Positions 4,417 through 52,828 of a DNA stretch of 64,000 nt are shown piece by piece. Within the stretch, counting starts at the first letter, position 1, and each line of letters starts with the position of its first letter. The translations under genes and the position numbers were made by a program. The notes under the pieces were generated by a model. It saw only the letters and a list, made by a program, of their open reading frames with translations. It ran no database searches and was not told where the DNA came from. The DNA lies in IMG/VR virus record IMGVR_UViG_3300032242_003291, positions 248,001 through 312,000 of that record; one strand, given 5' to 3'.

Positions 4417-4461
4417 ATAAATATCTTTTGTATTGTATAATTGGATTACAAACATATTTAT
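4417..4461. promoter_or_regulatory. divergent pair of TATTTAT putative late promoters
   Basis: TATTTAT on minus at 4417-4423 (gene starting 4402) and on plus at 4455-4461 (gene starting 4491). Confidence 0.6.
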
Positions 4462-4490
4462 AATAATAAACAAAACAAAATTTAATAATC

Positions 4491-4664
4491 ATGGGATGCG
4501 GATGCAAAAATAACGGAAATAACCCACCAGCTCAGCCACAAACTCCTCAACAAGTTCAACAGGCTCAACAAGCTAAGGTACAACAAAATGAAAGTGTTAA
4601 ATCTGCTATTAAAAAAACAGTAGAAAAATACTACAACGTGAACAAAACAAACACAAACGGCTGA
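4491..4664 (+). CDS. small Gln-rich protein with MGCGCK N-terminus (57 aa), not in ORF track
   Basis: MGCGCKNNGNNPPAQPQTPQQVQQAQQAKVQQNESVKSAIKKTVEKYYNVNKTNTNG*; own TATTTAT motif upstream and terminator downstream. Confidence 0.75.
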   Translation: MGCGCKNNGNNPPAQPQTPQQVQQAQQAKVQQNESVKSAIKKTVEKYYNVNKTNTNG

Positions 4665-4697
4665 ATCAAAGATTAAGGTATTTGTAAAAACTATTTC

Positions 4698-4725
4698 AAA
4701 GGAGCAATAAAATGCTCCTTTTTTT
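4698..4725 (+). terminator. intrinsic terminator
   Basis: AAAGGAGCA-ATAAAA-TGCTCCTTTTTTT hairpin with T-run. Confidence 0.75.
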
Positions 4726-4737
4726 GTATTTATATGT

Positions 4738-5742
4738 ATGGAATATTCTTGGGACGACATAGTAGAAAAATTCAATAATAATGATTTAGACGTTGAAAAG
4801 TATTTTAACGATTATCAGACATTTTTTAGTATCTTGAAAAAAAGAGGGTTAATGAGTGAAGTTGACCCAAAAAATGGCACTTCTAGCGAATACTGGCAAA
4901 ATGAATATCTATTATGGTTATATGAAAATGATAAAGAAAAGTATTACAAATGGATTCAAGAATTGTTGAACGATATTGTTATTGAAAATGGAATTGCATA
5001 CTTAGAAGTAACAGATAGGTCTGAATTATCTAAATTGTTTTGTAAGAACAGTAGAGGTGATATCAGTCGTGATACCATCGAATCTATTTTGTCAGGGGAA
5101 CGTGATTGGGAGCCTTACTACGATACAACGGATGATGTTTATGGAGACGTCATTGAAGAACTAACACCTGAAAATGATAAAAGATTGTGTGAATACATTG
5201 TTGAAACTTTAAAAGGTCAACAAGTTATAGGTTTGAGTGAAGAATTAGAACAAATCGCATCAGAACAAGGTCATCCTGATTATGTCGAAGTTAACATGGA
5301 AAATGTTAAAAGAATAGTTGACGACAAAGAATCTATGATTGAACTTTTAGATAACCAACTACACGATTTGAAAAGTGAGTTGTATTCAATCCATAGTAGT
5401 GCATATAACGACGCATATGAATCAGAGATTTGGGACGAGATATTTGATGAATTAAAAATTTATATAATAGGTTCAGGTGAATGGATAACCAAATCACACC
5501 CTTATAAAAAAAATACAGAAATTCAATATTTTAAGGTACCTTTGGTAGACTTTGAATCAAATATAAACGATTACTTAATTAATAATAAAGGTTACGGTCA
5601 ATCGGGGACGTTGGAGTATCACGGTAGTTACATCGATATCATGGCTGAAGATAGAGATTGTTTAAGTATAAGAGTACCTGATTATCCTGATTCAAGGAAA
5701 GTTGATAAAAATATTAATTTATACTTCAAAGATTATATTTAA
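4738..5742 (+). CDS. acidic hypothetical protein
   Basis: 334 aa, D/E-rich; TATTTAT at 4727-4733. Confidence 0.75.
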   Translation: MEYSWDDIVEKFNNNDLDVEKYFNDYQTFFSILKKRGLMSEVDPKNGTSSEYWQNEYLLWLYENDKEKYYKWIQELLNDIVIENGIAYLEVTDRSELSKLFCKNSRGDISRDTIESILSGERDWEPYYDTTDDVYGDVIEELTPENDKRLCEYIVETLKGQQVIGLSEELEQIASEQGHPDYVEVNMENVKRIVDDKESMIELLDNQLHDLKSELYSIHSSAYNDAYESEIWDEIFDELKIYIIGSGEWITKSHPYKKNTEIQYFKVPLVDFESNINDYLINNKGYGQSGTLEYHGSYIDIMAEDRDCLSIRVPDYPDSRKVDKNINLYFKDYI

Positions 5743-6530
5743 TGAAAATTGAACAAATGATACATAAAGTTTTAGAGGAACAAAGAGGTTTTACCCCACA
5801 CAAAAATCCTCCTAAGAACATCAAGAATATTCTATCTCAGATTGAATTGTTTGAAATGTATCCAAAGATTTTTGCCCTTGTGATTAAAGATGATAAGTTA
5901 AGAGCCAGAGTATTCATGCGTTACCAAGAGTTCTACGAATCGGACTCTGATTCATTCAGAGGTAAAGGATTCAAATGGTATGACTACGTTAAATTCTATA
6001 AAGAAAAGACAAAGAAAGATTACTTCTCATATCACGAAGATTGGGCAGGATATAATATTCCATGTACTTCTATTGAGTCATGTATGGCTGTTATCCCCGA
6101 CCTTAACTTCTATGATTTAATAATGTTCAGTGTTGTTGATACAATCAGAGAACAAGTTGGTAGTGAAAACTTTTATTTAATTGGTATTGACCAATCAACA
6201 GGAGAAGACCCATCACTTATATTCCATGAGGTTGCTCACGGATTATGGTTTTCATCCGCAGTATACAAAGCAAAACAATCTAAGAACATAGAAAGATTAA
6301 AACCTTTTGTTAGAGATGCAGTTGCGAAAAAGATTACTGGTATGGGTTATGGTGAAAACGTTGTGGATGATGAGATTCAAGCATATTTATCTACAGGTAT
6401 TGGTGATAACATGACAAGAATAAAAGATATCAAACAAGCCCAAATTCCATTCAAAGAAACATTTGATTCTTATGCTGGTAAAATAAAACCAAAAAAGATT
6501 CAAATTGATTGGAGTACTGACTTAGACTAA
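5742..6530 (+). CDS. putative zincin metallopeptidase with N-terminal leader
   Basis: IFHEVAHG (HEXXH) plus downstream DEIQAY; MKIEQMIHKVLEEQ leader. Confidence 0.65.
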   Translation: MKIEQMIHKVLEEQRGFTPHKNPPKNIKNILSQIELFEMYPKIFALVIKDDKLRARVFMRYQEFYESDSDSFRGKGFKWYDYVKFYKEKTKKDYFSYHEDWAGYNIPCTSIESCMAVIPDLNFYDLIMFSVVDTIREQVGSENFYLIGIDQSTGEDPSLIFHEVAHGLWFSSAVYKAKQSKNIERLKPFVRDAVAKKITGMGYGENVVDDEIQAYLSTGIGDNMTRIKDIKQAQIPFKETFDSYAGKIKPKKIQIDWSTDLD

Positions 6531-7384
6531 TGATTAAATTTATTAACATATTAGAAAACGTTATATCAGAACAAAAGAAATATCAATTTCATCCTGAAGT
6601 ACTTCAGAAGTTAAAAGATATTACAAATAGACTTTGGAATGATAGAAAAAAGAAATACAAAGGGAGAACATTAGTCGACTCTTTAATATTTCACGTTGCT
6701 GATGGTACTGAAGGTTTAGTTAAGTTTTATGTAAATCCTGATTTACCATACATTGGTTTCATGGATACTGAACCAAAAAAATCTACAAATCCTAAAGATA
6801 TATACATTGATGTTAATCCTAAAAACTACGAAAGTAAAAAGAATTTATATCTCACACTATATCATGAAATGATTCATGCGTCAGACCCTAATTTGTCAAC
6901 CAAGATGACTAAAAAATACATGTCAACTTATGATGAGAATAGTGATGAAAAGTATTGGGGTCATCCAATTGAATTCTTTGCAATAACTAACGAATTTTTG
7001 GAAGGCTTGATAAATGAATTCCAACTAAGAGTGTTCAGATTAAGAAATGTTGAAAATAAAAAAGCACTAATCAAATCATTTAATAACATATTAAATTATT
7101 TTTCAAAAGGTGAAAAGTTATCAAGATTATCTTTGAATATTTTGGACAGAATAAATGATACTGGTGTAGTTGAAGATAAATTCAAAAGAGTTTTTTCAGA
7201 TATTTCAGTTGAAAGTCCAATTTCTTCTGAATTAGTTAAGTCTGAAGATGAAGAACCATATTATTTAACATATATTAATTTAATCAAAAAATACAATCCG
7301 AAAATTTGGACAAGGTTTTTAACGATGTTATATAAAGCAAAGGAAGATGTTGAAGATGTGATAAATAAAAAGGGACTTAAATAA
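6530..7384 (+). CDS. putative zincin metallopeptidase with N-terminal leader
   Basis: LYHEMIHA (HEXXH) plus HPIEFFA; [15 protein letters not shown] leader. Confidence 0.65.
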
Positions 7385-7393
7385 GTCCCTTTT
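7368..7393. terminator. bidirectional terminator hairpin within overlapping 3' ends of convergent genes
   Basis: AAAAGGGACTTA-AA-TAAGTCCCTTTT. Confidence 0.7.
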
Positions 7394-9200
7394 CTTTTGC
7401 TATTAATTCCAATTTGTCTAATTTGTTTTGACTAACTTCAAGAATAACCGATTGTTCTTTTATTGCTTCAATACATAATGCAACAATATCTTGATATTTA
7501 ACTCTTAAAATTTCAGGTTCTTCACCCATTACTACTTCGGGTAATGCGATTTTAAGCTCTTGAGCGATAAACCCTATGTCTCTTCTTTCATTATTTCCAC
7601 CTGCTCCGTTTTTCCAAAAGAAACTAACCCCTCTAATTTTTTTAATTGTATTAATTGAATCTTTTATTATTTGGATATCTTTCTTAAACCTTTGGTCTGA
7701 TGGACCTGGAGGACCCGTTGGTCCTGTTGGTCCTGGCGCTCCTGTATCACCTGGTGCGCCTCCAGGTCCTGTCGGTCCTGTAGGTCCTTGAGGACCTTGT
7801 GGACCTGTATATCCTGTTGGTCCTCTACCTCCTTGTGGACCTGTTGGTCCTTGTGGTCCTGTTGGTCCTGTTGGACCTGGTGCACCACCACCACCTTGGC
7901 TTCCTTGAGCTCCTGTAGCACCTCCACCTCCTTGAGCACCCTGAGCACCTCCAGGTCCTGTTGGTCCTGTTGCACCTTGTGGTCCTCTTGGTCCCTGTGG
8001 CCCCGTTGCCCCTTGGGCTCCTTGACCTCCTGTTCCTCCTTGGGCTCCCTGAGCTCCTTGAGCTCCACCAGCTCCTTGAGCTCCCTGAGCTCCTACGGGT
8101 GATGGTCCTGGTATTCCTGTTGCACCTTGAGCACCTTGAGCTCCTGTAGCACCTCCACCTCCTTGTGCACCTTGTGCACCTTGGCTTCCTCCAGGACCTT
8201 GTGCACCTTGGTTTCCTCCAGGACCTTGAGCTCCTTGCGCACCTTGTCCTCCTGTAGCACCTTGGGCTCCTGTTGAACCTCCGCCTCCTTGTGCACCTTG
8301 CGCACCCTGTCCTCCTGTTGCTCCTTGAGCCCCTTGTGGTCCTTGGACTAAAATTCCTGTTGGTCCTTGAGCACCTGTAGCACCTTGTGGACCTGTAGCT
8401 CCTTGAGCACCTGTGATTCCCTGAGCTCCTTGAAACCCTTGTGCTCCTTGACCTCCTTGAGCACCTACTGAACCTAAACTTCCTTGAGCACCTTGTCCTC
8501 CTGTAGTTCCTTGAGCACCTTGTGGTCCAGCATTTCCTTGAGCACCTTGAAATCCTTGGGCTCCGATTGCACCTTGTGAACCTGTTGCTCCCTGTCCTCC
8601 CTGAGCCCCTTGGGCACCTTGTCCTCCTGTTGAACCCGCACCCCCCTGTGCACCTTGTCCTCCTTGAGCACCTTGAGCTCCTTGTCCTCCTGTCGGTCCT
8701 TGAGCACCTTGTGCTCCTGAAGCACCTTGAGCACCCTGAGCGCCTTGTCCTCCCTGAGCACCCTGAGCGCCCGTTGCTCCTCCTCCTCCTTGAGCACCCT
8801 GAGCACCTTGTCCTCCTTGAGCACCCTGAGTTGTACTGTTAGCTCCTTGTGCTCCCGCAGTTCCTTGGGCTCCTTGCGCACCTTGGATTCCCTGAGCTCC
8901 TTGAGCTCCTTGAGCACCTTGAGCCCCTGTTGGTCCTGATGGTCCTGCTGGTTGAGCACTTCCTTTCCAACCTGTACTATCTATTAAAGTTCCAAATGAA
9001 TTAATTAAAGATGTACCTAATCTTAAGTCAGCATTCGAAACTGCTATTGTTGGTTGAGTCGAATTAAATGCTATATAGGTTGTTGCACCTCTTTTGAATT
9101 TAATTGAACCAGATTCAATGACCATTGTTGTTACTGTACTCGCAGTATCACTAAAATCAATTTTGCCCGACCCTGGGGTTATAATTATATCTTCAGCCAC
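7377..9200 (-). CDS. collagen-like tail fibre/spike with C-terminal peptidase S74 intramolecular chaperone
   Basis: long Gly-X-Y (GAQ/GPT) tract followed by [10 protein letters not shown]...DIGFIAQEL...AIKE. Confidence 0.85.
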
Positions 9201-12200
9201 CTATTAACTCTTTTAGTTTGTTTATTCTTTGATAGATAGAATCAATTATTTTTTGTTGTTCTTGTATTGAACCAATACCCAAACTAACCATCGCACCATA
9301 TTCTACGGATTTGTATCCGTCTTCATCAGTAAATACTAATTCGGGAACTATATTTTCAACTTGTTGAGCAATAACACCAATAGCATTACCTTGAAAGGCT
9401 TCAGGTACTTCAATATTTTTGTCATTTATAATTTTCGGATGATTATAATCCCAAACGAAACTAACTCCTTCTATTTGTTTTGTTTTGCCGTAAACATCAG
9501 ACAAAGGTTTAATATTATCTTTTAATCTTCTATCTGATGGAGGGCCTTGTGGTCCTTGAGGTCCTGTTGGTCCTTGAGCACCTTGGGCACCTTGTCCTCC
9601 CATACCACCCTGTGGTCCTGTAGGTCCTACGTTTCCTTGAGGTCCTGTGTATCCGTATGGTCCTTGTGGTCCTGTGGCACCTTGTGGTCCTGTGGCACCT
9701 TGAGGTCCTGTTGGTCCTCCAACACCTTGAGCACCTGTTGCTCCTCCACCACCCTGAGAACCTTGCGCACCTGTTGCTCCTCCACCACCTGTCGCTCCTT
9801 GAGCTCCTTGGAATCCTTGAGCACCTCCTGGTCCTCCTGGCCCTTGAGCACCTTGTGGACCACCTGGTCCTGTGGCACCCGTCGCACCTGCAGTTCCACT
9901 TGCTGCCCCTTGAGCTCCTTGAGCTCCTTGACCTCCAGTTCCACCTTGAGGTCCCGTAGGTCCTTGAGCACCTGTTGCTCCTCCTCCACCTGCGGTTCCT
10001 TGAGCTCCTTGAGCTCCAGTTGTGGCACTTGCAGCACCTTGAGCACCTGTTGGTCCCTGAGAACCTTGAGCACCTTGAGCACCTGTTGTTCCACCCTGAG
10101 CACCTTGAGCACCAGTACCTCCTTGAGCGCCTTGGGCACCTTGAGCACCTGTTGTTCCACCTTGTGCTCCTTGAGCTCCTGTGGCACCTTGAGGACCTAA
10201 TCCTCCTTGAGCCCCTGTGGCACCTTGAGCACCTGTTGAACCTTGAGCACCTTGAGCACCTGTTGAACCTTGAGCACCTTGTACACCACCTTGAGCTCCT
10301 TGAGCTCCTTGAGCACCTTGTGGACCTTGTGGGCCTTGAGCACCTTGAGTAAGTCCTTGAGCTCCTTGAGCACCTGTAGCTCCTTGAAAACCCTGAGCTC
10401 CTTGAGCTCCTGTTACCACACTTGCACTTCCTTGAGCTCCTTGGGCTCCTGTATTCCCTGTGGCTCCCTGAGCTCCAGTTGTCACACCTTGAGCCCCTTG
10501 TGCTCCCTGAGCTCCCGTATTTCCTGTAGCTCCTTGAGCCCCTGTATTAGCACCTTGTGCACCTTGAGCACCTGTTGAGCCTTGAGCCCCTGTATTACCT
10601 TGAGCCCCTGTGTTGGCACCTTGTGCACCTTGGGCACCTGTCGAACCTTGAGCACCTGTTGCCCCTTGAGCACCTGTCGCCCCTTGAGCACCTGTTGTAC
10701 CTATAGTACCTTGAGCCCCTGCTGAACCTTGAGCCCCTGTAGGACCTGTGTTACCTGGAGCTCCTGTTGCTCCTTGAGCACCTTGACCACCTTGTGCACC
10801 TGCGGAGCCTTGAGCACCTGCTATACCTGATGTGGGTCCAACCCAAACTCCTGTATTATCAATCATCTTAAGACCACCAACATATAAATTACCTGTTACT
10901 GAAGTTCCACTTGAAACCATAGTATCTGTAATTGTTGATGAACTTGTGTTAGTTGAAGATGAAAAAACAATTTGACCATTTTGTACATCTATTGCCATCA
11001 AATTTGTTCCGTCATTAAACAACGCGTAAGGGTCAGTAATAGTTCCTTTACCTTGTGGATATATAATTACATTAGCCATTAATTCAATTTATTTTCTAAG
11101 TCTTTTAATTGTTCTTCGATGTCTTCAATAAATACTTGTTGTTCTTTTATACCTTCAACTAAAACCGCATTTAATTTAGCATACTCAACTTTATAATATC
11201 CATCTTCCGTAGTTTGTATTACTTCAGGGTAATATTCTCTAACGTTTTGTGCAATTAATCCAATTGAGTGTAATCTATCTTGTTTTTGATAATAAACGTA
11301 TTGACTTGGATTTAATTTTTCGTTCCAATCAAATTCAACAACATCAAACTTCAATATAGATTTCAATGTATCAGGAATTGTTTCAATTCCTTGTTTTAAT
11401 CTTCTATCTGAACAAAATCCCTGTGCAGACCAATAACTTCGATTATCTAAGTAACCGTAAACACCACAGATTTTAACGTAATTATTTTCAATTCCTGTAC
11501 CCGAGTTATTAAATGTTTGACATGCATAGTACGTAGGATATAAAAGTCCATATCCTCTTGATGAAATATTACATGCATAGTCATTTCCAAAAACTAAACC
11601 ACCATTACCATAATAACAAGCATAGCTTATAGAAGGTCCCCATTCGATACTAAGACTATAACAAGTTTGATATGCTGATGGACCTGTCGGACCTGCTGGA
11701 CCTGATGGGCCTTGAGCTCCTTGCGCTCCTTGATAACCAGTAGGTCCTGTATATCCGTATGGTCCTGGAGGGCCGTAGGGTCCTGTTGGTCCTTGTGGCC
11801 CTGTTGGTCCTGTTGGTCCTGTACCACCTTGAGGTCCTTGTGGTCCAGTACCTCCCTGTGCCCCTGTTGCACCTCCACCACCTTGTGACCCTTGTGCACC
11901 TGTCGCACCTTGTGGGCCTGTTGGACCTGTCGGTCCCGTGGCTCCTTGTGCTCCTGTGGCACCACCTCCTCCTGTGCTACCTTGAGCTCCTTGAGCTCCT
12001 GTTGGACCTCCTGGACCTGTTGGACCTGTGGGTCCACGAGAACCTTGACCTCCTGGTGCTCCTGTTGAACCTTGTGGTCCCGCCGCGCCTCCACCTCCTT
12101 GAGCTCCTTGAGCTCCTTGTCCTCCTTGTGCTCCTGTATTACCTGTGGCTCCTTGTGGACCTCTTGTTCCTGTAGCACCTGGTGAACCTTGAGCTCCTGT

Positions 12201-14170: not shown

Positions 14171-14178
14171 TATAAATA
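14171..14178 (-). promoter_or_regulatory. TATTTATA putative late promoter of the fibre operon
   Basis: about 20 nt upstream of ATG 14150. Confidence 0.6.
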
Positions 14179-17578: not shown

Positions 17579-17602
17579 CACTGCAAATATAAGAAAATAA
17601 AA

Positions 17603-19240: not shown

Positions 19241-19283
19241 CTAAAAAGATTTAATTATAAATATATTGTGAGAGCAAAAATAA

Positions 19284-20123: not shown

Positions 20124-20194
20124 ACTTCAATAATAAAACAAAATGTTGAAAAAGCAAATTTATTGTCGTATTATTTATAAATAAATCAATTACT

Positions 20195-23597: not shown

Positions 23598-23626
23598 TAT
23601 AAGTTATTGATTCTAAATGTGAATTT

Positions 23627-25309: not shown

Positions 25310-25334
25310 CACGTGATTTTTTATATAAATATCT

Positions 25335-29377: not shown

Positions 29378-29407
29378 TAAAAGGTGTACTTAATAAATAC
29401 ACCTTTT
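29378..29407 (-). terminator. terminator hairpin containing a TATTTAT motif
   Basis: AAAAGGTGTA...TACACCTTTT downstream of the sigma gene; ATAAATA at 29393-29399. Confidence 0.6.
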
Positions 29408-29415: not shown

Positions 29416-30213
29416 TTACATATAATCAAACAAGGAACCCGTCTCATTTCTTAATTTTCTAAGTGCTTTTTCTTTGATTTGACGGACCCTTTCCTTTGTT
29501 AAGTCAAAGTCACTACCAATATCTTCTAAGGTTCTTGTGGACCCTGAAAGACCAAAATAGTCCTCAATAATAATCTTCTCTCTCTCATCCAATACATCCA
29601 ACATGGATAATAACTTTTCTTTCAAAGTTTGTTCCGTAGATAGACCAGCATCAGGAGCATCTGAGTTTGGGTTATTAATAACGTCAATTAAGGTATCTCC
29701 TTCCTCATTCAAAGGACTTTCCAAATTAACTATCTTTGGTAAACTAGTGAATTTATCTGGTAAATTGTCTCCAGTGATTTCTTGTTCTTTTTTTGCCTTA
29801 TGCAATTCTTGAACCACATTCACTGGTAGACGAATGGTTCTTGCGTTCTCATTAAGAGATTGAAGGATGGATTGTCGAACCCACCAAACCGCATAAGATA
29901 TGAATCTTAATTTTTTTGTCCAATCGAAGTTTTCGATTGCTTTCAATAATCCGTAGTTACCTTCAGCAATCAAGTCAGGTAAATCTAACCCTTGGTTTTG
30001 ATATTGCTTACTTACGGTAATAACGAATCTGAGGTTACCCTCCACCAATTCTTTTTGGATTTCTTGTTTCTCTTGTAATGTTATATTACCTGACATCATC
30101 TTCTGAGCCAGTTCTCTTTCCCTTTCAGGAGTCATTACTTTAATCTTTCTAATGTCTTTAAGGTAGGAATTAATTTCCTCTTGATTGATAGGTATTACTG
30201 CTTTTTCTTTCAT
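29416..30213 (-). CDS. RNA polymerase sigma-70 factor, RpoD/SigA-like (Bacteroidota type, no region 1.1)
   Basis: NLRFVITVSKQYQNQGLDLPDLIAEGN, FISYAVWWVRQSI, IRLP, TLEDIG..LTKERVRQIKEKALRKLR. Confidence 0.92.
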   Translation of the reverse strand: MKEKAVIPINQEEINSYLKDIRKIKVMTPERERELAQKMMSGNITLQEKQEIQKELVEGNLRFVITVSKQYQNQGLDLPDLIAEGNYGLLKAIENFDWTKKLRFISYAVWWVRQSILQSLNENARTIRLPVNVVQELHKAKKEQEITGDNLPDKFTSLPKIVNLESPLNEEGDTLIDVINNPNSDAPDAGLSTEQTLKEKLLSMLDVLDEREKIIIEDYFGLSGSTRTLEDIGSDFDLTKERVRQIKEKALRKLRNETGSLFDYM

Positions 30214-30216: not shown

Positions 30217-30738
30217 TTATTTTTTACTATAACCGTCTAAAATGTCTTGTTCAAAGGGTGATAGTGATGGGTAACCTTTAGATAATATTTTATCAAGGAT
30301 TTGGTCTAAGGTAGGTCTTCTAAGATACTGTTCTCGTTCTCCCAAAAGTAATGCCACAAAATCGTCTTCTTCCTCTTCATCCATATATAAGTCAGGATTG
30401 TTTTTCACCTGTCTCATATCTATATTAATACTTACATCGTCACTTACATTTTCTAAATCAAATAAGTGAGTTTTTATATCTTCAGGTACTGAAACTGACA
30501 CATTGTCAGTAATCTCTGTCAAAATGAACGTTTCGGTAATTCCGAACAGTACGGTTTGAATATAAACAAATACCTCTTCTTTATCGACCTCAGTCTCAAA
30601 ATGGAACAATAAAATTCCTTTACTATGTTGAAACTTAAGGTGTTGTGAATCCACAATTGGTGTAATTGCCATCGCAATCTCAGTACACTCATCCTCCGAC
30701 TTAAAGTCGCCAATAATCGTTAGCAAATATCTATCCAT
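30217..30738 (-). CDS. hypothetical protein
   Basis: likely start MDRYL; C-terminal LDQILDKI...GYPSL motif; TATCTTTG at 30757-30764. Confidence 0.7.
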   Translation of the reverse strand: MDRYLLTIIGDFKSEDECTEIAMAITPIVDSQHLKFQHSKGILLFHFETEVDKEEVFVYIQTVLFGITETFILTEITDNVSVSVPEDIKTHLFDLENVSDDVSINIDMRQVKNNPDLYMDEEEEDDFVALLLGEREQYLRRPTLDQILDKILSKGYPSLSPFEQDILDGYSKK

Positions 30739-30807
30739 AATTTTTTGTAATTTAGTCAAAGATATGGGTTTAGTTTGAAAATCAGTATTTATACTGAATA
30801 TTTTTGA

Positions 30808-33188: not shown

Positions 33189-33292
33189 AATGTTTTTTTA
33201 TAAATATAATAATATTGTACAAAAGTTCAAATACTAAATATGGAAATATTGTACGATAATTTTTTAACTGAAGACATGTTGATAAATCTTTT

Positions 33293-38255: not shown

Positions 38256-38262
38256 ATTAATA

Positions 38263-38295
38263 AATATTCACAAATATAATAAAAGTGTGAATATT
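38263..38295. promoter_or_regulatory. inverted repeat (putative operator) over the RHH-HNH promoter
   Basis: AATATTCACA-N13-TGTGAATATT perfect 10-bp arms, overlapping TATTTAT and TATATTTG motifs. Confidence 0.55.
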
Positions 38296-43275: not shown

Positions 43276-45474
43276 TTAAAAATCTAATTTAACTACATAT
43301 TGCTGAATACCTTGTCTCAATTCAGGAGATTGTAGTTTAGATATAACCATAAGGTCTTTATTACTATTGTAAAGACCAATTTCAGTAACATAGGATGTTG
43401 TACCAGAAACCCAAGTTGGATTTGACGTATTGGTAAATTGATTTCTACCAAGATTAATTAGGTATTTCATCTCGTATATCGTTGCAGATATGTCAGTAGT
43501 TAGATTACCATAGAAATAATACTCATCACCAAAATTCAATGTGTCTGGTTGACCATTCATTGGTATGTCGATGTAGTTATTCAATTGGTAAATTGTTGCT
43601 CCTGTTGCAGGATAATAGTCATCTTGATTGATTTGGAATGTAACACCTGTTAACGAATCTGTTGTAATAAATCCATTGTTCAAAGTCATTGCTGATGTAA
43701 CATCAATCTCTCTCCATGCAGTTGCGGATGGTCTTGTATCACCTGTAACAAGTTGACATAATAACTTCATCGAAGTTGCTGTGAATCCTGTCATACCTGA
43801 TTGTGATAAGAACGGGAACTCAGCTCCGAATCTAACCGCCACGTTTTCAGTGTTTGCAGTTACGGAGTCAGCGGCTTTAATAACAGAATAGTAATTACAA
43901 TGTAAAGATGATGTTGCACCTGACACAGTATCAAATCTATAAGTAACCCATAATCTTTGAGCTGGATTTGTCATTATACCTTCTTGTGTTGAACCATTTG
44001 GATAACAGATATTTGGTGTTATCAACGAAAGTTTTGGTGCTGGTAGAGTCCAGTTTCTGTTTGATTTGTTAGATAATGCGGCAATTACTTCTTCATCATC
44101 AATAACCACAATCTCTTGGTCTGGAAATACTTTTCCAATTCTATTTAAGTTGGCATTACTATCAGGATTCAAATCCCATAGATGATAATATCTAATACCA
44201 GGGTCATTCATATCCAAATTCTTTGTTGATTTAATGTAATAAGGTATACATAAATCATAACCTGGAGGGTCTATCCAAAATGTCTCACCTATAGTAGAAC
44301 CTGTTGATTTGTGCCACATCAATGTAGGTATGTTAAGTTTGAAGTGTCTTGCCAAACCTATATTATCATTTGGATTTTGTGGGTCAAATGGAACAGTTGA
44401 GAACTTCTCACCATATACGTTATCAATGTTTTGATTTGTATAGTGAATGATTGCAATCGCCTTTTGATTCTTTGGTGTAACTATAATTTTTTCATCGAAG
44501 GAGTTATAGTAAAATACCTTACTCGTATCTGTTTGACCACTCGGCTCTTGATATCCGAGATATTCTTTAGTTCCAATATAAGTTACTGAATTATACATGT
44601 CATACCCTTGATAATAACTTGTGAATACGCCTGCAGGATTTTCAGACCAAGGAATATTCATATTCCATATTGGTGTATCCAAACGTTGTGCAACATTACA
44701 AGGAGATTCAAAGTTCAGTACATCATTAGACCAATAAGGTGCTGGTGTATTAAAATCATATAATTGAGTCATGCCAGATGGGTAAATGTACGCTCTTGCA
44801 TAATAGGTACCTGTATTAAGTAATGGGTATGATGGAACTGCTCTATCCAATGTAAGTGTGAAAGTTGTACCAGTTACTCCTGTTGTTGGAGTCATTGACT
44901 GAATCTTATATGTTAAAATTTGATTAGTGCCAAAAGTACCACATCCACCATTACCATCAAGAACTAATGTAACAAAATCATTAACTTGCGGAGTTCCTGT
45001 ACAAGTTGGTGAACAAACTGAATAATCATATTCAACTGTAATTGATGTTTGACCTGTCAATGTTGACATATCAACCCAATAGTTTGAAGTGATTGTGTAG
45101 GCTGAAGATGTTTGTATTTGAGTATTACCTGTTGTAAAAAATCCTTTTGGTCCCGCAGAATTATATACCTCCTGAACAATACTATCCATATAAGGAATAC
45201 CATATGTGTTACCCGCGCCACCTTGAACGTAATATGGATATTTTACGTTTTGTTTGTTTGATTCAGGAGAACCAGTATCATTTTGAGCATTGAATGCAGG
45301 CATCAAAATATTATTATTAACTTGATTATAATTGGTTACAGCTGAATAATTAACTTCACTATCACCTATTTGGAAATAAGCAATATTAAAATTACCTTGG
45401 GAGATATATCTTCTTCCAACATCTGTAACTCTTGTGTTAATTAATCCTGAGGTATTTTTTAGAATATATGACAT
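43276..45474 (-). CDS. virion structural protein (baseplate/tail-collar-like)
   Basis: N-terminal VTDVGR...FQIGDSEVNY and C-terminal VTEIGLYN...LMVISKL motifs; TATTTAT at 45480-45486. Confidence 0.6.
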   Translation of the reverse strand: MSYILKNTSGLINTRVTDVGRRYISQGNFNIAYFQIGDSEVNYSAVTNYNQVNNNILMPAFNAQNDTGSPESNKQNVKYPYYVQGGAGNTYGIPYMDSIVQEVYNSAGPKGFFTTGNTQIQTSSAYTITSNYWVDMSTLTGQTSITVEYDYSVCSPTCTGTPQVNDFVTLVLDGNGGCGTFGTNQILTYKIQSMTPTTGVTGTTFTLTLDRAVPSYPLLNTGTYYARAYIYPSGMTQLYDFNTPAPYWSNDVLNFESPCNVAQRLDTPIWNMNIPWSENPAGVFTSYYQGYDMYNSVTYIGTKEYLGYQEPSGQTDTSKVFYYNSFDEKIIVTPKNQKAIAIIHYTNQNIDNVYGEKFSTVPFDPQNPNDNIGLARHFKLNIPTLMWHKSTGSTIGETFWIDPPGYDLCIPYYIKSTKNLDMNDPGIRYYHLWDLNPDSNANLNRIGKVFPDQEIVVIDDEEVIAALSNKSNRNWTLPAPKLSLITPNICYPNGSTQEGIMTNPAQRLWVTYRFDTVSGATSSLHCNYYSVIKAADSVTANTENVAVRFGAEFPFLSQSGMTGFTATSMKLLCQLVTGDTRPSATAWREIDVTSAMTLNNGFITTDSLTGVTFQINQDDYYPATGATIYQLNNYIDIPMNGQPDTLNFGDEYYFYGNLTTDISATIYEMKYLINLGRNQFTNTSNPTWVSGTTSYVTEIGLYNSNKDLMVISKLQSPELRQGIQQYVVKLDF

Positions 45475-45508
45475 CTTATATAAATATTTTTGTTTTTACT
45501 TTATGGTA

Positions 45509-48463: not shown

Positions 48464-48530
48464 TTATGATGTTATTATATCCTATAAGTATAGGTTTTAA
48501 TGATATTTTGTATAGGTTTATCATATCTAA

Positions 48531-49175: not shown

Positions 49176-49390
49176 TGAACTACTGTTACTCCTGAAATTA
49201 TACAATTATTATTATCAATCACTTTCAACATATAAGATGGTGAAGTGTTGTATGGCGATGGTATGTCAAATATGTATGGAGTTGAACTTATTGTTGTAAT
49301 ATAAAAACAAGCCGAGCCATTGGGTTGACAAACAAACACATCGTATGGTGATTGTCCTGTTATACTATCTATTGTTACTTGAATTGCCAT
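49172..49390 (-). CDS. small beta-rich virion protein
   Basis: 72 aa with three Cys. Confidence 0.7.
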   Translation of the reverse strand: MAIQVTIDSITGQSPYDVFVCQPNGSACFYITTISSTPYIFDIPSPYNTSPSYMLKVIDNNNCIISGVTVVQ

Positions 49391-49403
49391 TATCTTAAAT
49401 ATT

Positions 49404-52400
49404 TTAACAAGCTACCGAACTATATGTTACGTTAGGATTATCGGTACCTGAAACACAACTTCCACAAATACTTGCACCCTGAGGGAAGTATTGTCCTTGT
49501 CCGTTACATACATCAGTTTGTCCACTATTTGTTCCCGCCTGAACAAGGACAAAGAATGATGCCGTACTATTCAAATAAATAGGGTTAAGACATTGTGTAC
49601 CACTATTACCATTTTGATAATAAACAGTAACATTCACTAGTGTATCCACACTAACATTATTATCCAAATAAACTGATGCACCCATAAAGTCATCAATAGT
49701 TCCTCCAACGCAAGGTTGCATAAACCCACCTGCTTGAGTTACTTTTGATGGTGGTTTTGTTTGACAAGTATTACAATCATCATAGGTTATTGTAGGTGCG
49801 GAAGAGAAATAATCTCCTGTAAACGTAATTGGCGTTGTATTTTGCGGTGCAATATAGTTAGAATCATATCTACCTAAATAAATCCAACAATTACCACTAC
49901 CATCTTTGAATGTTTGATTTGCCGATATTGTGAATGATAATGGTAATGTTTGTATTACTGTTATTATGTTTCCTGATATTGTTGAACAACTTTGGGCAAC
50001 ATAGACATATACTGGCGATGGAGTCATAGTCGGAGTTTCAGTTGGCGTTGGTGTGTTGGTCGCGGTTTCTGTAGGTGTTTGTGTCATAGTTGGAGTCGGT
50101 GTAGGTGTATCACTACCTGTTGGAGTTGGAGAACTACCAATAGTTGGAGTAGTCGATGGTGTTGCTGTTTGGCTTGCAGTTTGAGTTGGTGTTACAGGAG
50201 ATGTTGTAACAGGTGTACTTGTTTGAGTTGGTGTAGGTGTAGGGGTGTTTGTTGCTGTAGTTGTAACTGATGGGGTAGGAGTTGGATAGATTGAACAATA
50301 AGCACAAGAACCATATATTTGATATATGAAGTTAACAGTAGAATTAGATGAAATATTACTGTCGTCTCTTGTATACGTAACACACATATTTTCATTGTTG
50401 ATGTTTGCAAAGAATGTTGTTCCTGTAATAATACTTACCCCACTAAACACTAATGAATCTGAAGTATATAATTCTTTACCTGTATCACAATTTGTTAAAA
50501 CTTTTGCAGATACACAACTAAATCTCTCATCTAACATAACAAATGTTGCCTTACCTTGAACATCAACAGTTCTTGTTAACGTCACAGATGGTGTATTTGT
50601 TATTGTTGGAGTAATTGCTGGTGTGTAACCACTCATAGTGAATGAAATTGCTTTGTTATCACAAATCATTCCTGTTGGTGAAGGTGTTGGTGTTAAACCA
50701 AATGAGTTTATATCAAAATTAACATCAGCACAAGCAACACTCGGTGTTGGTGTTGGCAATGGTTCCCAATCACAATCAAAATATGCATTGAAATCAAAAG
50801 TATTACAATTGATTGGCGTTGGTGTTGGTGTAGGACAAACTCCTCCTGTGAATTCATTTGCAGAAATATCAGGACATTGAGAATAACATGGTGTTGCTCC
50901 TTGTAATATACAAGAACCACCAAGACTATTACTTAAACACCATGCACTTCCGTTATAATAAATGTATGCTGTTGTAACACCATCCCCAACATAATACTGT
51001 CTTGTATTATATGTTCCCGCATCCGTGTAATTTCCATTGTAATTCAATAGACTTGATAAAGATGACCTTAAACAAAATGTACTATAAGAACATGGTGCTG
51101 CGGTTGATGAAACCGTTGGTGTCATTGTTGGTGTTGTATATGGTGTTGGTGTTGGACTTGGATTTAATAAACACGATTTACAATCAGAATAACTTGGTGC
51201 ACCTAAATCGGGACCACCAGGACCTGAGAATTCAATCCAAGAATAACATTCTCCACTATAAATGTAAGTCGCACCAACAAATGCAGTGTCTTCTTCAACG
51301 TTTGCATAAAATACCGTTTGGTCTGTACACTTACTAAGTAAAGAGGCTTTATTAGCTGACCTTGGACAAATATTATCACCACATCCTCCATCAGTCATCA
51401 AGAAAGAAACCCCATATCCATTATATTGTGGACCTGTACCATCATTTATCACACTCGTTGCACAACCTGTAAATTGAGTGCTACCTGTAATATAATATGT
51501 GACACCAATTGTGGATGGAATTGCTGGGTCATTAAATCTAAAAATGTTAGTTGCGTTAGAACAATCTACAAATTGAACAGTATAACCTAATGTAGGTGAA
51601 GGTGTTGGAGTCTGTGTTGGCGTCTGTGTTGGCGTTTCAGTATTAGTTGGAGTTGGTGTTGGAGTATCACTACCTGTCGGTGTTGGCGTTTCAGTATTAG
51701 TTGGAGTTGGTGTTGGAGTATCACTACCTGTTGGTGTTGGCGTTTCAGTATTAGTTTGAGTTGGAGTCTGAGTTGGCGTTTCAGTATTAGTTGGAGTTGG
51801 TGTTGGAGTATCACTACCTGTAGGAGTTTGAGTTGGAGTTATTGTTGGGTCAGGTGTTGAAGTTGGTGTCGGGTCTGGTGGAGGTGCAATACATGCCAAA
51901 TCAAAACAATCCGCAGGTGCTGGAAATAATAAAGTATCTAAATCAAAATCAAATGGCTGTGGTGTTTGACTTGGAGCAACGTCAGGTAACAAATAACAAG
52001 TGTATATAGAAGTTTGAACCCAACTACCTTGTAAACCACCATTTGTACTTCTTCCTATTTTTGTACCTACACCAGTACAAGGTGACATACTATAATAGTA
52101 GTAGGACACGGAAGGTGTAGATGCTGGTGTTGAATCAGGTGTAGATGCTGGTGTTGAATCAGGTGTAGATGCTGGTGTTGAATCAGGTGTTGGTGTTGGT
52201 GTAGTAATATCACCTGGACAATATTGACCACAAGAACCCAAGTCGGTTAAAAATCCAACATATGGGCCAGTTATACTAATTGCACATACACTATCACCAT
52301 AATTTATATCTACGTTACTGTAACTTACATTATTACAATCTGTATAATAAAACCCACCGTAATTACCAGAATTATTATAATATGTGGTACATTGAATACA

Positions 52401-52724
52401 TGGGATTGTAGGTGTAACAGTTGGAGTTGGGTCTGGTGTTGGTGGTGGTCCACAAAGGATTCCAGTGTTAATGAATGAACTATTTAATGCATCAATTTGT
52501 GCATCATTCTGATAATAGAAAGCAGTTGTAGTTCCAAATTCATCAAAACAGGTTGAAGCACTATAAGTTCCTGAAGAAGTGTAACTTTCAGTTATTGTGT
52601 TACCTAAACAGTCTTGATACATCATATAAACTGTTCCGTCAACATATGGATAACTTCCGCTGTTGCCGAATGAGTTTGCAATGTCAACACCATCAATATA
52701 AAGCTCTAAATATTTACACGCCAT
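49404..52724 (-). CDS. large Cys-rich, mucin-like Pro/Thr-rich virion protein
   Basis: small Cys-rich domains separated by TPTPT tracts; TATTTAT at 52741-52747. Confidence 0.75.
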   Translation of the reverse strand: MACKYLELYIDGVDIANSFGNSGSYPYVDGTVYMMYQDCLGNTITESYTSSGTYSASTCFDEFGTTTAFYYQNDAQIDALNSSFINTGILCGPPPTPDPTPTVTPTIPCIQCTTYYNNSGNYGGFYYTDCNNVSYSNVDINYGDSVCAISITGPYVGFLTDLGSCGQYCPGDITTPTPTPDSTPASTPDSTPASTPDSTPASTPSVSYYYYSMSPCTGVGTKIGRSTNGGLQGSWVQTSIYTCYLLPDVAPSQTPQPFDFDLDTLLFPAPADCFDLACIAPPPDPTPTSTPDPTITPTQTPTGSDTPTPTPTNTETPTQTPTQTNTETPTPTGSDTPTPTPTNTETPTPTGSDTPTPTPTNTETPTQTPTQTPTPSPTLGYTVQFVDCSNATNIFRFNDPAIPSTIGVTYYITGSTQFTGCATSVINDGTGPQYNGYGVSFLMTDGGCGDNICPRSANKASLLSKCTDQTVFYANVEEDTAFVGATYIYSGECYSWIEFSGPGGPDLGAPSYSDCKSCLLNPSPTPTPYTTPTMTPTVSSTAAPCSYSTFCLRSSLSSLLNYNGNYTDAGTYNTRQYYVGDGVTTAYIYYNGSAWCLSNSLGGSCILQGATPCYSQCPDISANEFTGGVCPTPTPTPINCNTFDFNAYFDCDWEPLPTPTPSVACADVNFDINSFGLTPTPSPTGMICDNKAISFTMSGYTPAITPTITNTPSVTLTRTVDVQGKATFVMLDERFSCVSAKVLTNCDTGKELYTSDSLVFSGVSIITGTTFFANINNENMCVTYTRDDSNISSNSTVNFIYQIYGSCAYCSIYPTPTPSVTTTATNTPTPTPTQTSTPVTTSPVTPTQTASQTATPSTTPTIGSSPTPTGSDTPTPTPTMTQTPTETATNTPTPTETPTMTPSPVYVYVAQSCSTISGNIITVIQTLPLSFTISANQTFKDGSGNCWIYLGRYDSNYIAPQNTTPITFTGDYFSSAPTITYDDCNTCQTKPPSKVTQAGGFMQPCVGGTIDDFMGASVYLDNNVSVDTLVNVTVYYQNGNSGTQCLNPIYLNSTASFFVLVQAGTNSGQTDVCNGQGQYFPQGASICGSCVSGTDNPNVTYSSVAC
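51600..52200. repeat. near-perfect DNA repeats encoding Pro/Thr linkers
   Basis: GTTGGCGTTTCAGTATTAGTTGGAGTTGGTGTTGGAGTATCACTACCTG x3 (about 51628-51820) and a 24-bp GGTGTAGATGCTGGTGTTGAATCA tandem (about 52114-52190). Confidence 0.8.
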
Positions 52725-52828
52725 ATCATTATCTTACACTATAAATAACCAGTTATTTGTTTTTATACAAGAAAATATAGTTTTATCTAAAACTAAATAA
52801 AGGGCGGTCAGGACTATATTTATGATAT

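What the first reader, a model, noticed from the sequence alone, without database searches (positions are those of the whole stretch)
4417..52823. Putative late promoter TATTTAT(A), the reverse complement of the T4 late promoter
Seen on the coding strand 4-45 nt upstream of at least 13 gene or operon starts (motifs at 4417, 4455, 4727, 14172, 19257, 20172, 25325, 29393, 33200, 38260, 45480, 52741, 52817; variant TACTTAT at 48484). It is always oriented with the gene and mostly precedes structural, lysis or leader-bearing genes. Established: the T4 gp55 promoter is TATAAATA on the coding strand, so this is the opposite orientation. Inference: a distinct late-promoter class read by a phage factor. 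The sigma at 29416-30213 keeps a host-like region 2.4, so a different factor may be responsible.
Basis: partly seen in the sequence, partly recalled or inferred. Interest (0 to 1): 0.6.

Follow-up and report, generated by a model that had tools for sequence, protein, structure and literature searches.

The report
Conserved phage promoter heptamer TATTTAT
A strictly conserved seven-base signal, TATTTAT, lies a few bases upstream of about a quarter of the genes of this 317-kb freshwater phage and its many uncultured relatives; it most likely marks the phage's own promoters, including all those of the virion-gene operons, and is probably read by a phage-encoded sigma factor.

Summary
All 13 sites are at the stated coordinates and point the same way as the gene downstream.

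- **Window:** TATTTAT is not over-represented overall (34 sites, 39 expected). But 13 of the 34 lie in the 3.3% of strand positions that are sense-upstream windows (p 3e-11).
- **Whole genome:** it is the top upstream 7-mer, with 87 sense and 36 antisense copies against 15.6±4 in shuffles.
- **Relatives:** it is also the top upstream 7-mer in two relatives fetched whole. It is invariant before orthologous genes whose flanks have diverged, for example 75 of 75 portal upstreams. Motif presence agrees between orthologues (odds ratio 81, p 3e-36).
- **Anatomy:** no single-mismatch variant is enriched and there is no -35-like element. The distance to the ATG is bimodal, 4-5 nt or 12-17 nt, which implies leaderless or very short-leader mRNAs.
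- **Second promoter class:** TTTG-N19-TAnnTTTG, the Bacteroidota sigma-A type, precedes the tRNAs and the operon of the window's sigma70-like gene.
- **Candidate reader:** a second, highly divergent sigma with weak similarity to T4 gp55 lies outside the window.

Not shown: transcription start sites, late timing, and which sigma reads the motif. The TACTTAT variant at 48484 and the site at 20177 are not supported.

The parts
4417..4423 (-). TATTTAT, 14 nt before the ATG of ORF 2642-4402 (586 aa)
   Evidence: 'aaagaTATTTATtaaa' is conserved before the G001 orthologue
4455..4461 (+). TATTTAT, 29 nt before small ORF 4491-4664 (57 aa), divergent from the 4417 site
   Evidence: the ORF has a tblastn match in G001 (47% identity)
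4727..4733 (+). TATTTAT, 4 nt before the ATG of ORF 4738-5742 (predicted leaderless class), directly after a hairpin plus T-run
   Evidence: conservation in G001 is unresolved because the ORF starts differ
14172..14178 (-). TATTTAT, 21 nt before the ATG of ORF 11079-14150 (1023 aa)
   Evidence: conserved in G001
19257..19263 (-). TATTTAT, 16 nt before the ATG of ORF 17927-19240
   Evidence: conserved in G001, replaced by TAnnTTTG boxes in G002
20172..20183 (.). Two overlapping copies. The plus-strand copy at 20172 is 16 nt before small ORF 20195-20344. The minus-strand copy at 20177 is 53 nt before ORF 19284-20123. Both are doubtful.
   Evidence: the minus-strand copy is not conserved in G001, where only TAAATTTG is kept; the small ORF has a weak tblastn match in G002
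25325..25331 (-). TATTTAT, 12-15 nt before the start of ORF 23627-25312 (561 aa)
   Evidence: 'agaTATTTAT' is invariant in all 15 distinct relatives printed, although the protein is only 34-61% identical; also in G001 and G002
29393..29399 (-). TATTTAT, 45 nt before ORF 29066-29347, inside the loop of the terminator hairpin (about 29379-29408) that follows the sigma gene
   Evidence: the heptamer is kept before the orthologous gene with or without the hairpin, at 1-45 nt
33200..33206 (-). TATTTAT, 11 nt before the N6 DNA methyltransferase gene 30843-33188
   Evidence: no orthologue of this gene in the relatives
38260..38266 (-). TATTTAT, 4 nt before the ATG of small ORF 38091-38255 (predicted leaderless class)
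   Evidence: conserved in G002 at 5 nt
45480..45486 (-). TATTTAT, 5 nt before the ATG of ORF 43276-45474 (732 aa; predicted leaderless class)
   Evidence: The heptamer and the 5-nt spacing are conserved in G001 and G002 while the spacer and flanks differ
52741..52747 (-). TATTTAT, 16 nt before the ATG of ORF 49404-52724 (1106 aa)
   Evidence: conserved in G001
52817..52823 (+). TATTTAT, 5 nt before the ATG of small ORF 52829-53005 (58 aa)
   Evidence: the ORF is 90% identical in G001; upstream conservation is unresolved
48484..48490 (-).
   Evidence: No one-mismatch variant is sense-enriched (TACTTAT 11 sense, 12 antisense); not conserved
29416..30213 (-). Sigma70-family gene (265 aa) with regions 1.2, 2 and 4; one of two candidate readers
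   Evidence: Pfam and PHROG hits; aligns with primary SigA of solved holoenzymes, E 1.5e-49
30217..30738 (-). Gene of unknown function (173 aa) co-transcribed upstream of the sigma gene
   Evidence: no family match
30757..30764 (-). Host-type (Bacteroidota sigma-A) box TATCTTTG, 18 nt before the ATG at 30738 and after a terminator hairpin; it drives the operon that contains the sigma gene
   Evidence: a TAnnTTTG box sits at -545 to -600 from the sigma start in nearly all 19 relatives

Best explanation
TATTTAT is the core of a phage-specific promoter class. It is one strictly conserved -10-like heptamer with no -35 element. Host core RNA polymerase uses it after being reprogrammed by a phage-encoded sigma factor.

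Transcription would start about 4-6 nt after the heptamer. Genes with the ATG 4-5 nt downstream (41 of 119) would then give leaderless mRNAs. Those at 12-17 nt (34 of 119) would give A-rich leaders of roughly 7-12 nt.

The likely cascade is as follows. Host sigma-A reads bipartite TTTG/TAnnTTTG promoters, which stand before the tRNAs, the operon of the window's sigma70-like gene and other genes. A phage sigma then switches RNA polymerase to the TATTTAT promoters that head all virion and lysis operons and many other units.

My preferred reader is the divergent two-domain sigma at G000 92371-93153, which shows weak similarity to T4 gp55. The sigma70-like protein at window 29416-30213 is the alternative.

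Shown: enrichment, orientation, strictness, spacing, conservation, the existence of two promoter classes and of two sigmas. Inferred: promoter function, start-site position, timing, and which sigma reads the motif.
For: Statistics:
- Top upstream 7-mer de novo in three genomes.
- A 50-kb control stretch of a Flavobacterium phage of the same GC content shows no enrichment (7 sense, 6 antisense).

Strictness and architecture:
- No one-mismatch variant is enriched.
- No upstream element is present (information content below 0.14 bit from -45 to -2). The TAnnTTTG class does have TTTG at -24/-23 from the box.

Features of transcription units:
- The motif is found before 6-7% of genes with an upstream gap of 10 nt or less, and before 39-54% of genes with gaps of 11-120 nt.
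- 45 of 119 sites have a T5 run within 35 nt upstream, against 36 of 272 controls. A conserved terminator-then-motif layout stands before G000 105795-106118.
- The major capsid protein (MCP) gene lacks the motif in 18 of 18 relatives, while the gene immediately upstream of it has the motif in 9 of 9.

Conservation:
- 75/75, 66/66 and 54/54 orthologous upstreams keep it.
- Orthologue concordance has odds ratio 81, p 3e-36 for G001, and p 4e-10 for G002.
- Spacing class is conserved: 20 short-short, 22 long-long, 1 mixed.
- The spacing gap at 6-11 nt recurs in three genomes. This fits a fixed start site combined with constraints on translation.

RNA:
- Lake metatranscriptome contigs cover the MCP gene and the gene upstream of it. 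They stop 14-22 nt inside the 5' end of that motif-headed gene, with almost nothing beyond.

Factors:
- No RNA polymerase beta or beta' genes were found.
- The sigma70-like gene is driven by a conserved host-type promoter.
- The second sigma has an AlphaFold model with pLDDT 89.5. All top-50 fold matches are sigma factors, with the sigma-2 domain at Z 8.7-9.6 and rmsd 2.5-3.0 A.
- Its family profile hits SigA at E 0.0024 and T4 gp55 at 0.17 among solved structures. Its top PHROG hit is the gp55 family. BLASTP against gp55 gives E 7e-4.
- The gene just after this sigma carries the motif here, in contig L163, and in contig L164, where it takes the form AACTATTTA.
Against: - No start site was observed. 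Contigs cannot show 5' ends, and they stop 32-40 nt short of the predicted start.
- The motif never precedes a tRNA gene. It lies very close to start codons, so an element acting on the mRNA is not excluded.
- Similarity of the second sigma to gp55 is weak: hhalign probability 54%, PHROG E 0.044, and Foldseek E-values all above 0.05.
- That sigma has a sigma-4-like C-terminal domain, yet the promoters show no -35 element.
- T4 gp45 gave no BLAST match in this genome; gp33 was not searched for.
- The second sigma's own operon appears to be headed by a TATTTAT site, with no recognisable host-type promoter upstream. That is awkward for a simple cascade.
- Distal copies stand before DNA polymerase (59 nt) and RNR (52 nt). 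Inheritance along same-strand gene runs would also put the UvsX and exonuclease genes under this promoter class, which blurs the 'late' label.
Confidence: 0.72

Rival explanations
1. TATTTAT acts on the mRNA rather than on DNA. It could be a translation-initiation enhancer for SD-less Bacteroidota ribosomes, perhaps ones carrying the phage's own bS21. Or it could be the recognition site of a phage endoribonuclease that trims polycistronic RNA to leaderless or short-leader cistrons.
For: The motif lies 4-17 nt from the ATG in most cases. It never precedes tRNA genes, which have TAnnTTTG instead. The phage encodes bS21. No Shine-Dalgarno sequences are present. Orientation specificity would be expected in either case.
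Against: The spacing is bimodal with a tail to about 60 nt. It varies between orthologues (1-45 nt before window 29066-29347) while the heptamer stays invariant. The motif is nearly absent before tightly packed operon-internal genes, which also need translation. It often follows terminator hairpins, where little upstream RNA should exist. All-or-none heptamer conservation is unusual for ribosome-binding signals.
Confidence: 0.12
2. TATTTAT is a promoter, but it is read by the sigma70-like protein of the window (29416-30213) or by the host's own sigma-A, not by the divergent second sigma.
For: The window's sigma is a complete sigma with regions 1.2, 2 and 4. It is expressed from a conserved host-type promoter, as an early regulator would be. 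It differs from SigA at two positions of the -12-recognition helix, reading ...RQSILQS... against ...RQAITRA.... This could shift its specificity. The heptamer shares T-A at its 5' end and T at two further positions with TAnnTTTG.
Against: It keeps the YA.WW.RQ core used by primary sigmas to capture A-11 and T-7 (residue roles are from my own knowledge of sigma70). In the register that puts the heptamer's A at -11, position -7 would be A, not T. It has a strong region 4, yet no -35 or -33 element accompanies TATTTAT. The start-site map of Flavobacterium psychrophilum found no TATTTAT-like class among six promoter motifs (PMC9723704).
Confidence: 0.3
3. The pattern is a by-product of AT-rich intergenic composition, or of conserved stop-codon and coding contexts, and has no function.
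For: The window-wide count is at chance level. The genome is 33% GC with AT-rich spacers. A few cited sites are not conserved (20177) or sit in a hairpin loop (29393).
Against: The count exceeds dinucleotide shuffles by about 18 sd and stands above all same-composition permutations. There is strong sense-over-antisense asymmetry. The heptamer is invariant amid diverged flanks in up to 75 relatives. Orthologue concordance has p 3e-36. A composition-matched control phage shows no enrichment.
Confidence: 0.02

Closest known systems
T4-type late promoters (TATAAATA, read by gp55 with gp33 and the gp45 clamp)
   Same: A single, very strictly conserved AT-rich -10-like element with no -35 element. 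It is used by host core RNA polymerase with a phage sigma. It stands before head, tail and lysis genes. The phage itself is a distant T4-like myovirus: gp23-like major capsid protein, portal, sheath, UvsX and a gp46-like SbcC. It has a sigma with weak gp55 similarity.
   Different: The sequence is TATTTAT(A/T), not TATAAATA. Sense-strand TATAAATA is not enriched (16 copies against 12.7 expected). The candidate sigma is 248-260 aa with an added sigma-4-like domain, whereas gp55 is 185 aa. T4 gp45 gave no BLAST match, and gp33 was not searched for. About a third of the promoters sit 4-5 nt from the ATG, implying leaderless mRNAs, unlike the SD-led late mRNAs of T4.
Bacteroidota sigma-A promoters (TTTG at -33, TAnnTTTG at -12 to -5; PMC9723704)
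   Same: This class is present in the same genome as a second promoter class. TATTTAT shares the 5' TA and the T-rich middle, and would occupy about the same position relative to the start site.
   Different: TATTTAT has A where the box has the third-from-last T. It has no G at the 3' end and no -33 TTTG. It is never used before tRNA genes. Predicted leaderless mRNAs are about 34% of motif-bearing genes (41 of 119), against 5.5% in F. psychrophilum.
Sigma cascades of large phages (for example SPO1 gp28 and gp33/34; phage-encoded sigma70-like factors of jumbo phages and cyanophages)
   Same: The phage encodes sigma factors that redirect host RNA polymerase to phage-specific promoter classes. 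The early sigma gene lies behind a host-type promoter.
   Different: The motif, the host phylum and the sigma family differ. The divergent sigma has no match in 50,697 GenBank phage records. It is 85-95% conserved in the 120 closest of about 8,000 metagenomic proteins matched.

Membership tests
T4-type late promoter system (gp55/gp33/gp45) | Consensus TATAAATA on the non-template (sense) strand at about -10 | tested here: not met
   Sense TATAAATA occurs 16 times against 12.7±3.9 in shuffles, and 53 times antisense because it is the complement of the real motif. The enriched word is TATTTAT.
T4-type late promoter system (gp55/gp33/gp45) | No -35 element; a single short, highly conserved box | tested here: met
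   Information content is below 0.14 bit at all positions from -45 to -2. No one-mismatch variant is enriched.
T4-type late promoter system (gp55/gp33/gp45) | A gp55-family sigma encoded by the phage | tested here: inconclusive
   The ORF at G000 92371-93153 is a sigma by fold. The only gp55-family (phrog_234) match in the genome lies in it, at E 0.004-0.044. BLASTP against T4 gp55 gives E 7e-4, hhalign gives probability 54%, and its profile hits gp55 chain 7d7c_F at E 0.17. A six-frame search of the genome with T4 gp55 itself found nothing.
T4-type late promoter system (gp55/gp33/gp45) | A gp45 sliding clamp and the gp33 co-activator | tested here: inconclusive
   T4 gp45 found no match in the genome, but the tool states that an empty result shows nothing. 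gp33 was not searched for.
T4-type late promoter system (gp55/gp33/gp45) | Drives late (virion and lysis) genes after replication starts | not testable with these tools
   Position only. The motif heads the units that contain the major capsid protein, portal, terminase, sheath, adaptor, baseplate wedge and endolysin-like genes. There are no time-resolved data.
Bacteroidota sigma-A promoter | TAnnTTTG box at -12 to -5 with TTTG near -33 | tested here: not met
   TATTTAT lacks the 3' TTG and the -33 element. In the same genomes the TA[TC][CA]TTTG class has TTTG at -24/-23 from the box in 26 of 64 cases.
Bacterial promoter in general | A primary transcript 5' end a few nt downstream | not testable with these tools
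   Only assembled metatranscriptome contigs were available. They end 14-22 nt inside the first gene of the capsid operon and show nothing upstream. This is compatible with a start there but is not a start-site map.

The most novel reading that the evidence does not exclude
An abundant, uncultured clade of roughly 280-330-kb T4-like phages of freshwater Bacteroidota may use a previously undescribed sigma family, a gp55-like sigma-2 domain joined to a sigma-4-like domain. This sigma would read an invariant single-element promoter, TATTTAT. The promoter is placed so that about a third of its transcripts are leaderless and most of the rest have leaders of about 10 nt. If so, the phage would switch the mode of transcription initiation and of translation initiation together, in a phylum that lacks Shine-Dalgarno pairing and rarely uses leaderless mRNAs. 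The phage's own bS21 might contribute.
Probability: 0.3. Interest if true: 0.75.

Novelty: new variant of a known kind. Interest (0 to 1): 0.6.

Why it matters
Promoters of Bacteroidota phages are almost uncharted, and I found no paper that describes TATTTAT as a phage promoter. The heptamer is sharp and conserved, and this phage clade is among the commonest large phages in lake metagenomes: more than 600 portal matches in IMG/VR, and about 8,000 metagenomic proteins matched for each sigma. That gives three uses:
- It allows operon maps for these genomes to be drawn from sequence alone.
- It provides a concrete pair of candidates, two sigmas and two promoter classes, for biochemical study of how RNA polymerase of Bacteroidota is redirected.
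- It offers a natural test case for mass use of leaderless mRNAs in an SD-less host. The parts could also serve as orthogonal promoter-sigma pairs for Flavobacterium or Bacteroides genetics.

Tried and rejected
- **Window-wide count:** no over-representation. This is not the right test; position and strand are.
- **Shine-Dalgarno-based start refinement:** failed because the genome has no SD sequences. Longest-ORF starts and the first ATG after the motif were used instead.
- **Near-identical DNA search against GenBank phages:** no match.
- **Host as LD12/SAR11:** considered because a 318-kb Lake Biwa phage (LBVG_1) is predicted to infect LD12 (10.1101/655167). Rejected for this genome. Its capsid protein is not the Atu_ph07-like one described for LBVG_1; its nearest isolates are Microcystis, Flavobacterium and Rhodothermus phages. 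Its tRNA and early promoters are the Bacteroidota TTTG/TAnnTTTG type.
- **Protein Atlas search of the sigma:** gave only viral clusters and no clue to the host.
- **Solved-structure search with the second sigma as a single sequence:** nothing significant. The family profile was needed.
- **Foldseek E-values for the second sigma:** all above 0.05. Domain-level VIA alignment was needed.
- **T4 gp55 and gp45 as queries on the genome:** no match.
- **Phage-encoded RNA polymerase:** no beta or beta' Pfam hits. The T7-type model was silent in the control genomes too, so that result is uninformative.
- **Second sigma in GenBank phages:** absent, so no cultured system is at hand.
- **Flavobacterium phage immuto (first 50 kb):** no TATTTAT enrichment. 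Used as a negative control.
- **Metatranscriptomes:** only contigs, not raw reads, so no 5' ends.

Full report
**What the window is.** The 64-kb window is bases 248,001-312,000 of a 317,259-bp IMG/VR virus record that CheckV rates 100% complete. It has 33% GC and 20 tRNA genes. Start codons have no Shine-Dalgarno sequences upstream. PHROG and Pfam hits show a distant T4-like myovirus:
- a gp23-like major capsid protein (MCP), portal, large terminase, tail sheath and baseplate wedge;
- UvsX-like recombinase, DnaB, DNA polymerase, ribonucleotide reductase (RNR), thymidylate synthase, RNA ligase and a gp46-like SbcC.

The nearest cultured capsid proteins are only 37-42% identical: Microcystis phage Mel-JY01, Flavobacterium phage immuto and Rhodothermus phage RM378. 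No RNA polymerase beta or beta' domain is encoded, so the phage must use host core enzyme. The clade is very common in lake metagenomes. There are more than 600 portal matches in IMG/VR at 81-98% identity, and about 8,000 metagenomic proteins matched for each of its two sigma genes.

**Checking the observation.**
- The raw count in the window is at chance: 34 sites against 39.4±6.3. Placement is not. 13 of 34 sites lie in sense upstream-60 windows, which are 3.3% of strand positions (p 3e-11).
- An unbiased k-mer scan of the whole genome puts TATTTAT first among all 7-mers in co-directional intergenic DNA: 66 sense, 18 antisense, 4.1 expected.
- In 60-nt upstream windows of 391 ORFs it occurs 87 times sense and 36 times antisense. 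Dinucleotide shuffles give 15.6±4.0, maximum 28. It stands well above every other A2T5 permutation.
- Half of all 221 copies lie in the 6.4% of the genome that is intergenic.
- As a composition control, 50 kb of Flavobacterium phage immuto (34% GC) has 7 sense and 6 antisense copies.

**Anatomy.**
- The heptamer is all-or-none. Pooled over three genomes it is 262 sense, 128 antisense, 26 expected. No single-substitution variant shows a sense excess. The proposed variant TACTTAT at 48484 therefore has no support.
- The base before the motif is A, G or C but rarely T. The base after it is A (56%) or T (31%). Nothing is conserved from -45 to -2.
- The distance from the motif end to the ATG is bimodal: 4 nt in 23 genes and 5 nt in 18, then 12-17 nt in 34 genes. 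Only six genes fall at 6-11 nt, and a tail runs to about 60 nt.
- The same two peaks appear in both relatives fetched whole. Spacing class is conserved between orthologues: 20 short-short, 22 long-long, 1 mixed. Meanwhile spacer sequences diverge to 54% identity.
- The motif is rare before genes that abut the previous gene (6-7% at gaps of 10 nt or less) and common at gaps of 11-120 nt (39-54%).
- 38% of sites have a T5 run within 35 nt upstream, against 13% of controls. Several follow clear hairpin-plus-T-run terminators.

**Conservation.**
- In 24 loci around the sigma gene (sigma 65-83% identical), 'agaTATTTAT' is invariant before the orthologue of window 23627-25312, even where that protein is only 34-61% identical. 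It is also kept before the orthologue of 29066-29347, whether or not the terminator hairpin around it is present.
- In 80 loci around the portal gene, the heptamer is present in 75/75, 66/66, 54/54, 9/9 and 9/9 upstream regions of five consecutive genes, among strongly diverged flanks. It is present in 0/18 upstream regions of the MCP gene, which abuts the motif-headed gene before it.
- Two relatives were fetched whole: G001 (321,283 bp, terminal repeats) and G002 (282,192 bp). Among 249 reciprocal-best orthologues of G001 (median 65% identity), the motif is present in both for 67, in one only for 23, and in neither for 159 (odds ratio 81, p 3e-36). For G002 (median 51% identity) p is 4e-10.
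Site 33200 belongs to a methyltransferase gene that the relatives lack. Sites 4727 and 52817 are unresolved. Site 20177 is not conserved.

**A second promoter class, and the host.**
- TAnnTTTG, mostly TATCTTTG or TATATTTG, is also enriched upstream of genes: 67 sense against 23.6±4.9. It has a TTTG element 23-24 nt before the box in 26 of 64 strict cases.
- It stands 8-30 nt before the tRNA-Pro, Glu, Arg and Phe genes.
- This is the bipartite sigma-A promoter of Bacteroidota, with TAnnTTTG at -12 to -5 (PMC9723704).
- Three further observations point to a Bacteroidota host: the lack of SD sequences, the nearest cultured capsids including Flavobacterium and Rhodothermus phages, and a MAG label 'Chryseobacterium' on one homologue.
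- A 318-kb Lake Biwa phage assigned to LD12 (10.1101/655167) is a different phage. Its capsid protein is Atu_ph07-like, whereas this one's is not.
- TATTTAT never precedes a tRNA gene. In the F. psychrophilum start-site map none of six promoter classes resembles it, and only 5.5% of mRNAs are leaderless.

**Which genes follow the motif.**
- Directly behind it: tail sheath (34 nt), adaptor-like protein (5 nt), portal (29 nt), the gene before the MCP gene (22 nt), an endolysin-like peptidase (5 nt), and many large proteins of unknown function.
- By same-strand inheritance: the MCP, terminase, baseplate wedge and a Hoc-like protein.
- Distal copies precede DNA polymerase (59 nt) and RNR (52 nt). 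DnaB, a helicase, thymidylate synthase and RNA ligase have none. The last two lie in runs headed by host-type promoters.
- In all, 108 genes have their own copy and about 58% of genes lie downstream of one. It is the phage's main promoter-like signal. 'Late' is plausible for the virion modules but not demonstrated.

**RNA evidence.** Eight lake, estuary and freshwater metatranscriptomes hold parts of the capsid region, but only as assembled contigs. Four lake runs were laid on L035:2001-8000. Contigs cover the MCP gene and the gene before it (2447-5724). They stop at 5716-5724, which is 14-22 nt inside the gene whose ATG is at 5738 and whose motif is at 5761-5767. Almost nothing lies beyond. 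This fits a transcription unit starting at that motif, but contigs cannot show 5' ends.

**Who reads it.**
- The window's sigma (29416-30213) has regions 1.2, 2 and 4. It aligns with primary SigA proteins (E 1.5e-49) and keeps '...YAVWWVRQ...'. It reads 'SILQS' where SigA has 'AITRA'.
- Its two-gene operon follows a terminator and a TATCTTTG box 18 nt before the ATG. A TAnnTTTG box sits at the same place in nearly all relatives. It therefore looks like an early gene.
- A second sigma lies at G000 92371-93153, outside the window. Pfam Sigma70_r2 matches it only at E 0.01-0.1.
- Its family profile (63 sequences drawn from 1,099 cluster representatives) hits SigA chains at E 0.0024-0.008 and T4 gp55 at 0.17 among solved structures.
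- Its best PHROG is the gp55 family. BLASTP against gp55 gives E 7e-4 over the region-2 helix, and hhalign gives 54% probability.
- The AlphaFold model (pLDDT 89.5) matches only sigma factors in the top 50. The sigma-2 domain matches at Z 8.7-9.6 and rmsd 2.5-3.0 A over 91-98 residues, including sigma-E bound to its -10 strand. A sigma-4-like C-terminal domain is also present.
- It is 85-95% identical in the 120 closest of about 8,000 metagenomic proteins matched and absent from GenBank phages.
- The gene immediately after it carries the motif at 4 nt here. It carries TATTTAT in a 30%-identical relative (L163) and AACTATTTA in a 32%-identical one (L164), where the same word precedes two further genes. 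This hints that the core TATTTA travels with this sigma family.
- In the register that puts the heptamer's A at -11, position -7 would be A rather than the T that primary-type sigmas capture (my own knowledge of sigma70). I therefore favour the divergent sigma, at roughly 45% against 30% for the sigma70-like one.

**Verdict.** The reading as a distinct phage promoter class is the best explanation (confidence about 0.7). It works like the T4 late promoter in architecture but fails membership on sequence, and only doubtfully shares the gp55 factor. An element acting on the RNA is the main rival. I rate it a new variant of a known kind, of moderate to good interest. The grounds are the abundance of the clade, the sharpness of the signal, the implied large-scale use of leaderless mRNAs in an SD-less phylum, and the undescribed sigma family.

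Noticed in passing
window 30757-30764 (-); also upstream of window ORFs 33293-33766, 39429-40316, 41186-42100, 15947-17581 and 1836-2615; G000 tRNA cluster 131.6-138.9 kb: A second, bipartite promoter class, TTTG-N19/20-TA[TC][CA]TTTG, of the Bacteroidota sigma-A type. It precedes tRNA genes and the operon that holds the sigma70-like gene, and it is conserved in relatives.
   Followed up: yes
G000 92371-93153 (+), outside the window (L002:1282-2064): A highly divergent sigma factor with a sigma-2 domain, a sigma-4-like domain and weak similarity to T4 gp55. It is 85-95% conserved in the 120 closest of about 8,000 metagenomic proteins matched, is absent from GenBank phages, and is named 'SprT metalloprotease' or 'hypothetical' by automatic annotation.
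   Followed up: yes
G000 107695-107847 (+), outside the window (L159): The phage encodes ribosomal protein bS21 (Pfam S21, E 4.7e-10), inside the head-gene region and on the opposite strand. bS21 is the protein reported to mask the anti-SD sequence in Bacteroidota ribosomes (from my own knowledge).
   Followed up: partly
window about 23588-23615 (-), upstream of ORF 23120-23587: A conserved 'TATATTCTCCATAG' element directly before the start codon. In many relatives it is followed by its inverted partner 'CTATGGAG' at the start of the gene. It may be a hairpin or operator that overlaps the initiation site.
   Followed up: no
window 7377-14150: A GC-rich island (44-51% GC against about 30% elsewhere) covering three large minus-strand ORFs of about 600 to 1023 aa. 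The last of them is headed by the TATTTAT site at 14172. No family match was sought.
   Followed up: no
window about 29379-29408 (-): The terminator hairpin after the sigma gene (stem AAAGGTGTA/TACACCTTT, then a T-run) carries TATTTAT in its loop. Some relatives keep the heptamer without the hairpin.
   Followed up: partly
window 30843-33188 (-): A 781-aa N6 DNA methyltransferase gene has no orthologue at this position in any of 24 related loci, nor in G001 or G002. It looks like a recent insertion, yet it has its own TATTTAT 11 nt upstream.
   Followed up: partly
G000 about 74-93 kb (+), outside the window: A run of about 19 kb and 25 or more plus-strand genes (nucleotide-sugar epimerases, glycosyltransferases) with no internal TATTTAT or TAnnTTTG. 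It ends with the divergent sigma gene. The only motif copy is at its head (73.8 kb).
   Followed up: partly
G000 57281-58819 (+), outside the window: A 512-aa protein with both Fe/Mn superoxide dismutase domains (E 9e-40 and 9e-23), headed by TATTTAT and followed by an adaptor-like gene.
   Followed up: no
G002 (L144-L158), whole genome: In the more distant relative, the words GTTCAGT (26 sense, 0 antisense) and GAGTTCA (12, 0) are strongly sense-biased upstream of genes. This suggests a further upstream element or repeat that is absent from G000.
   Followed up: no
L162 (Flavobacterium phage immuto, 1-50000): In this cultured Flavobacterium phage TATTTAT is not enriched, but TATATTA (11 sense, 1 antisense) and GTATATT (7, 0) are. 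It may have a promoter word of its own.
   Followed up: no
L164:1150-1185, 10785-10808 and 14825-14846: A contig carrying a 32%-identical homologue of the divergent sigma has AACTATTTA before three genes, alongside TAnnTTTG boxes before others. This may be a clade-specific variant of the motif.
   Followed up: partly
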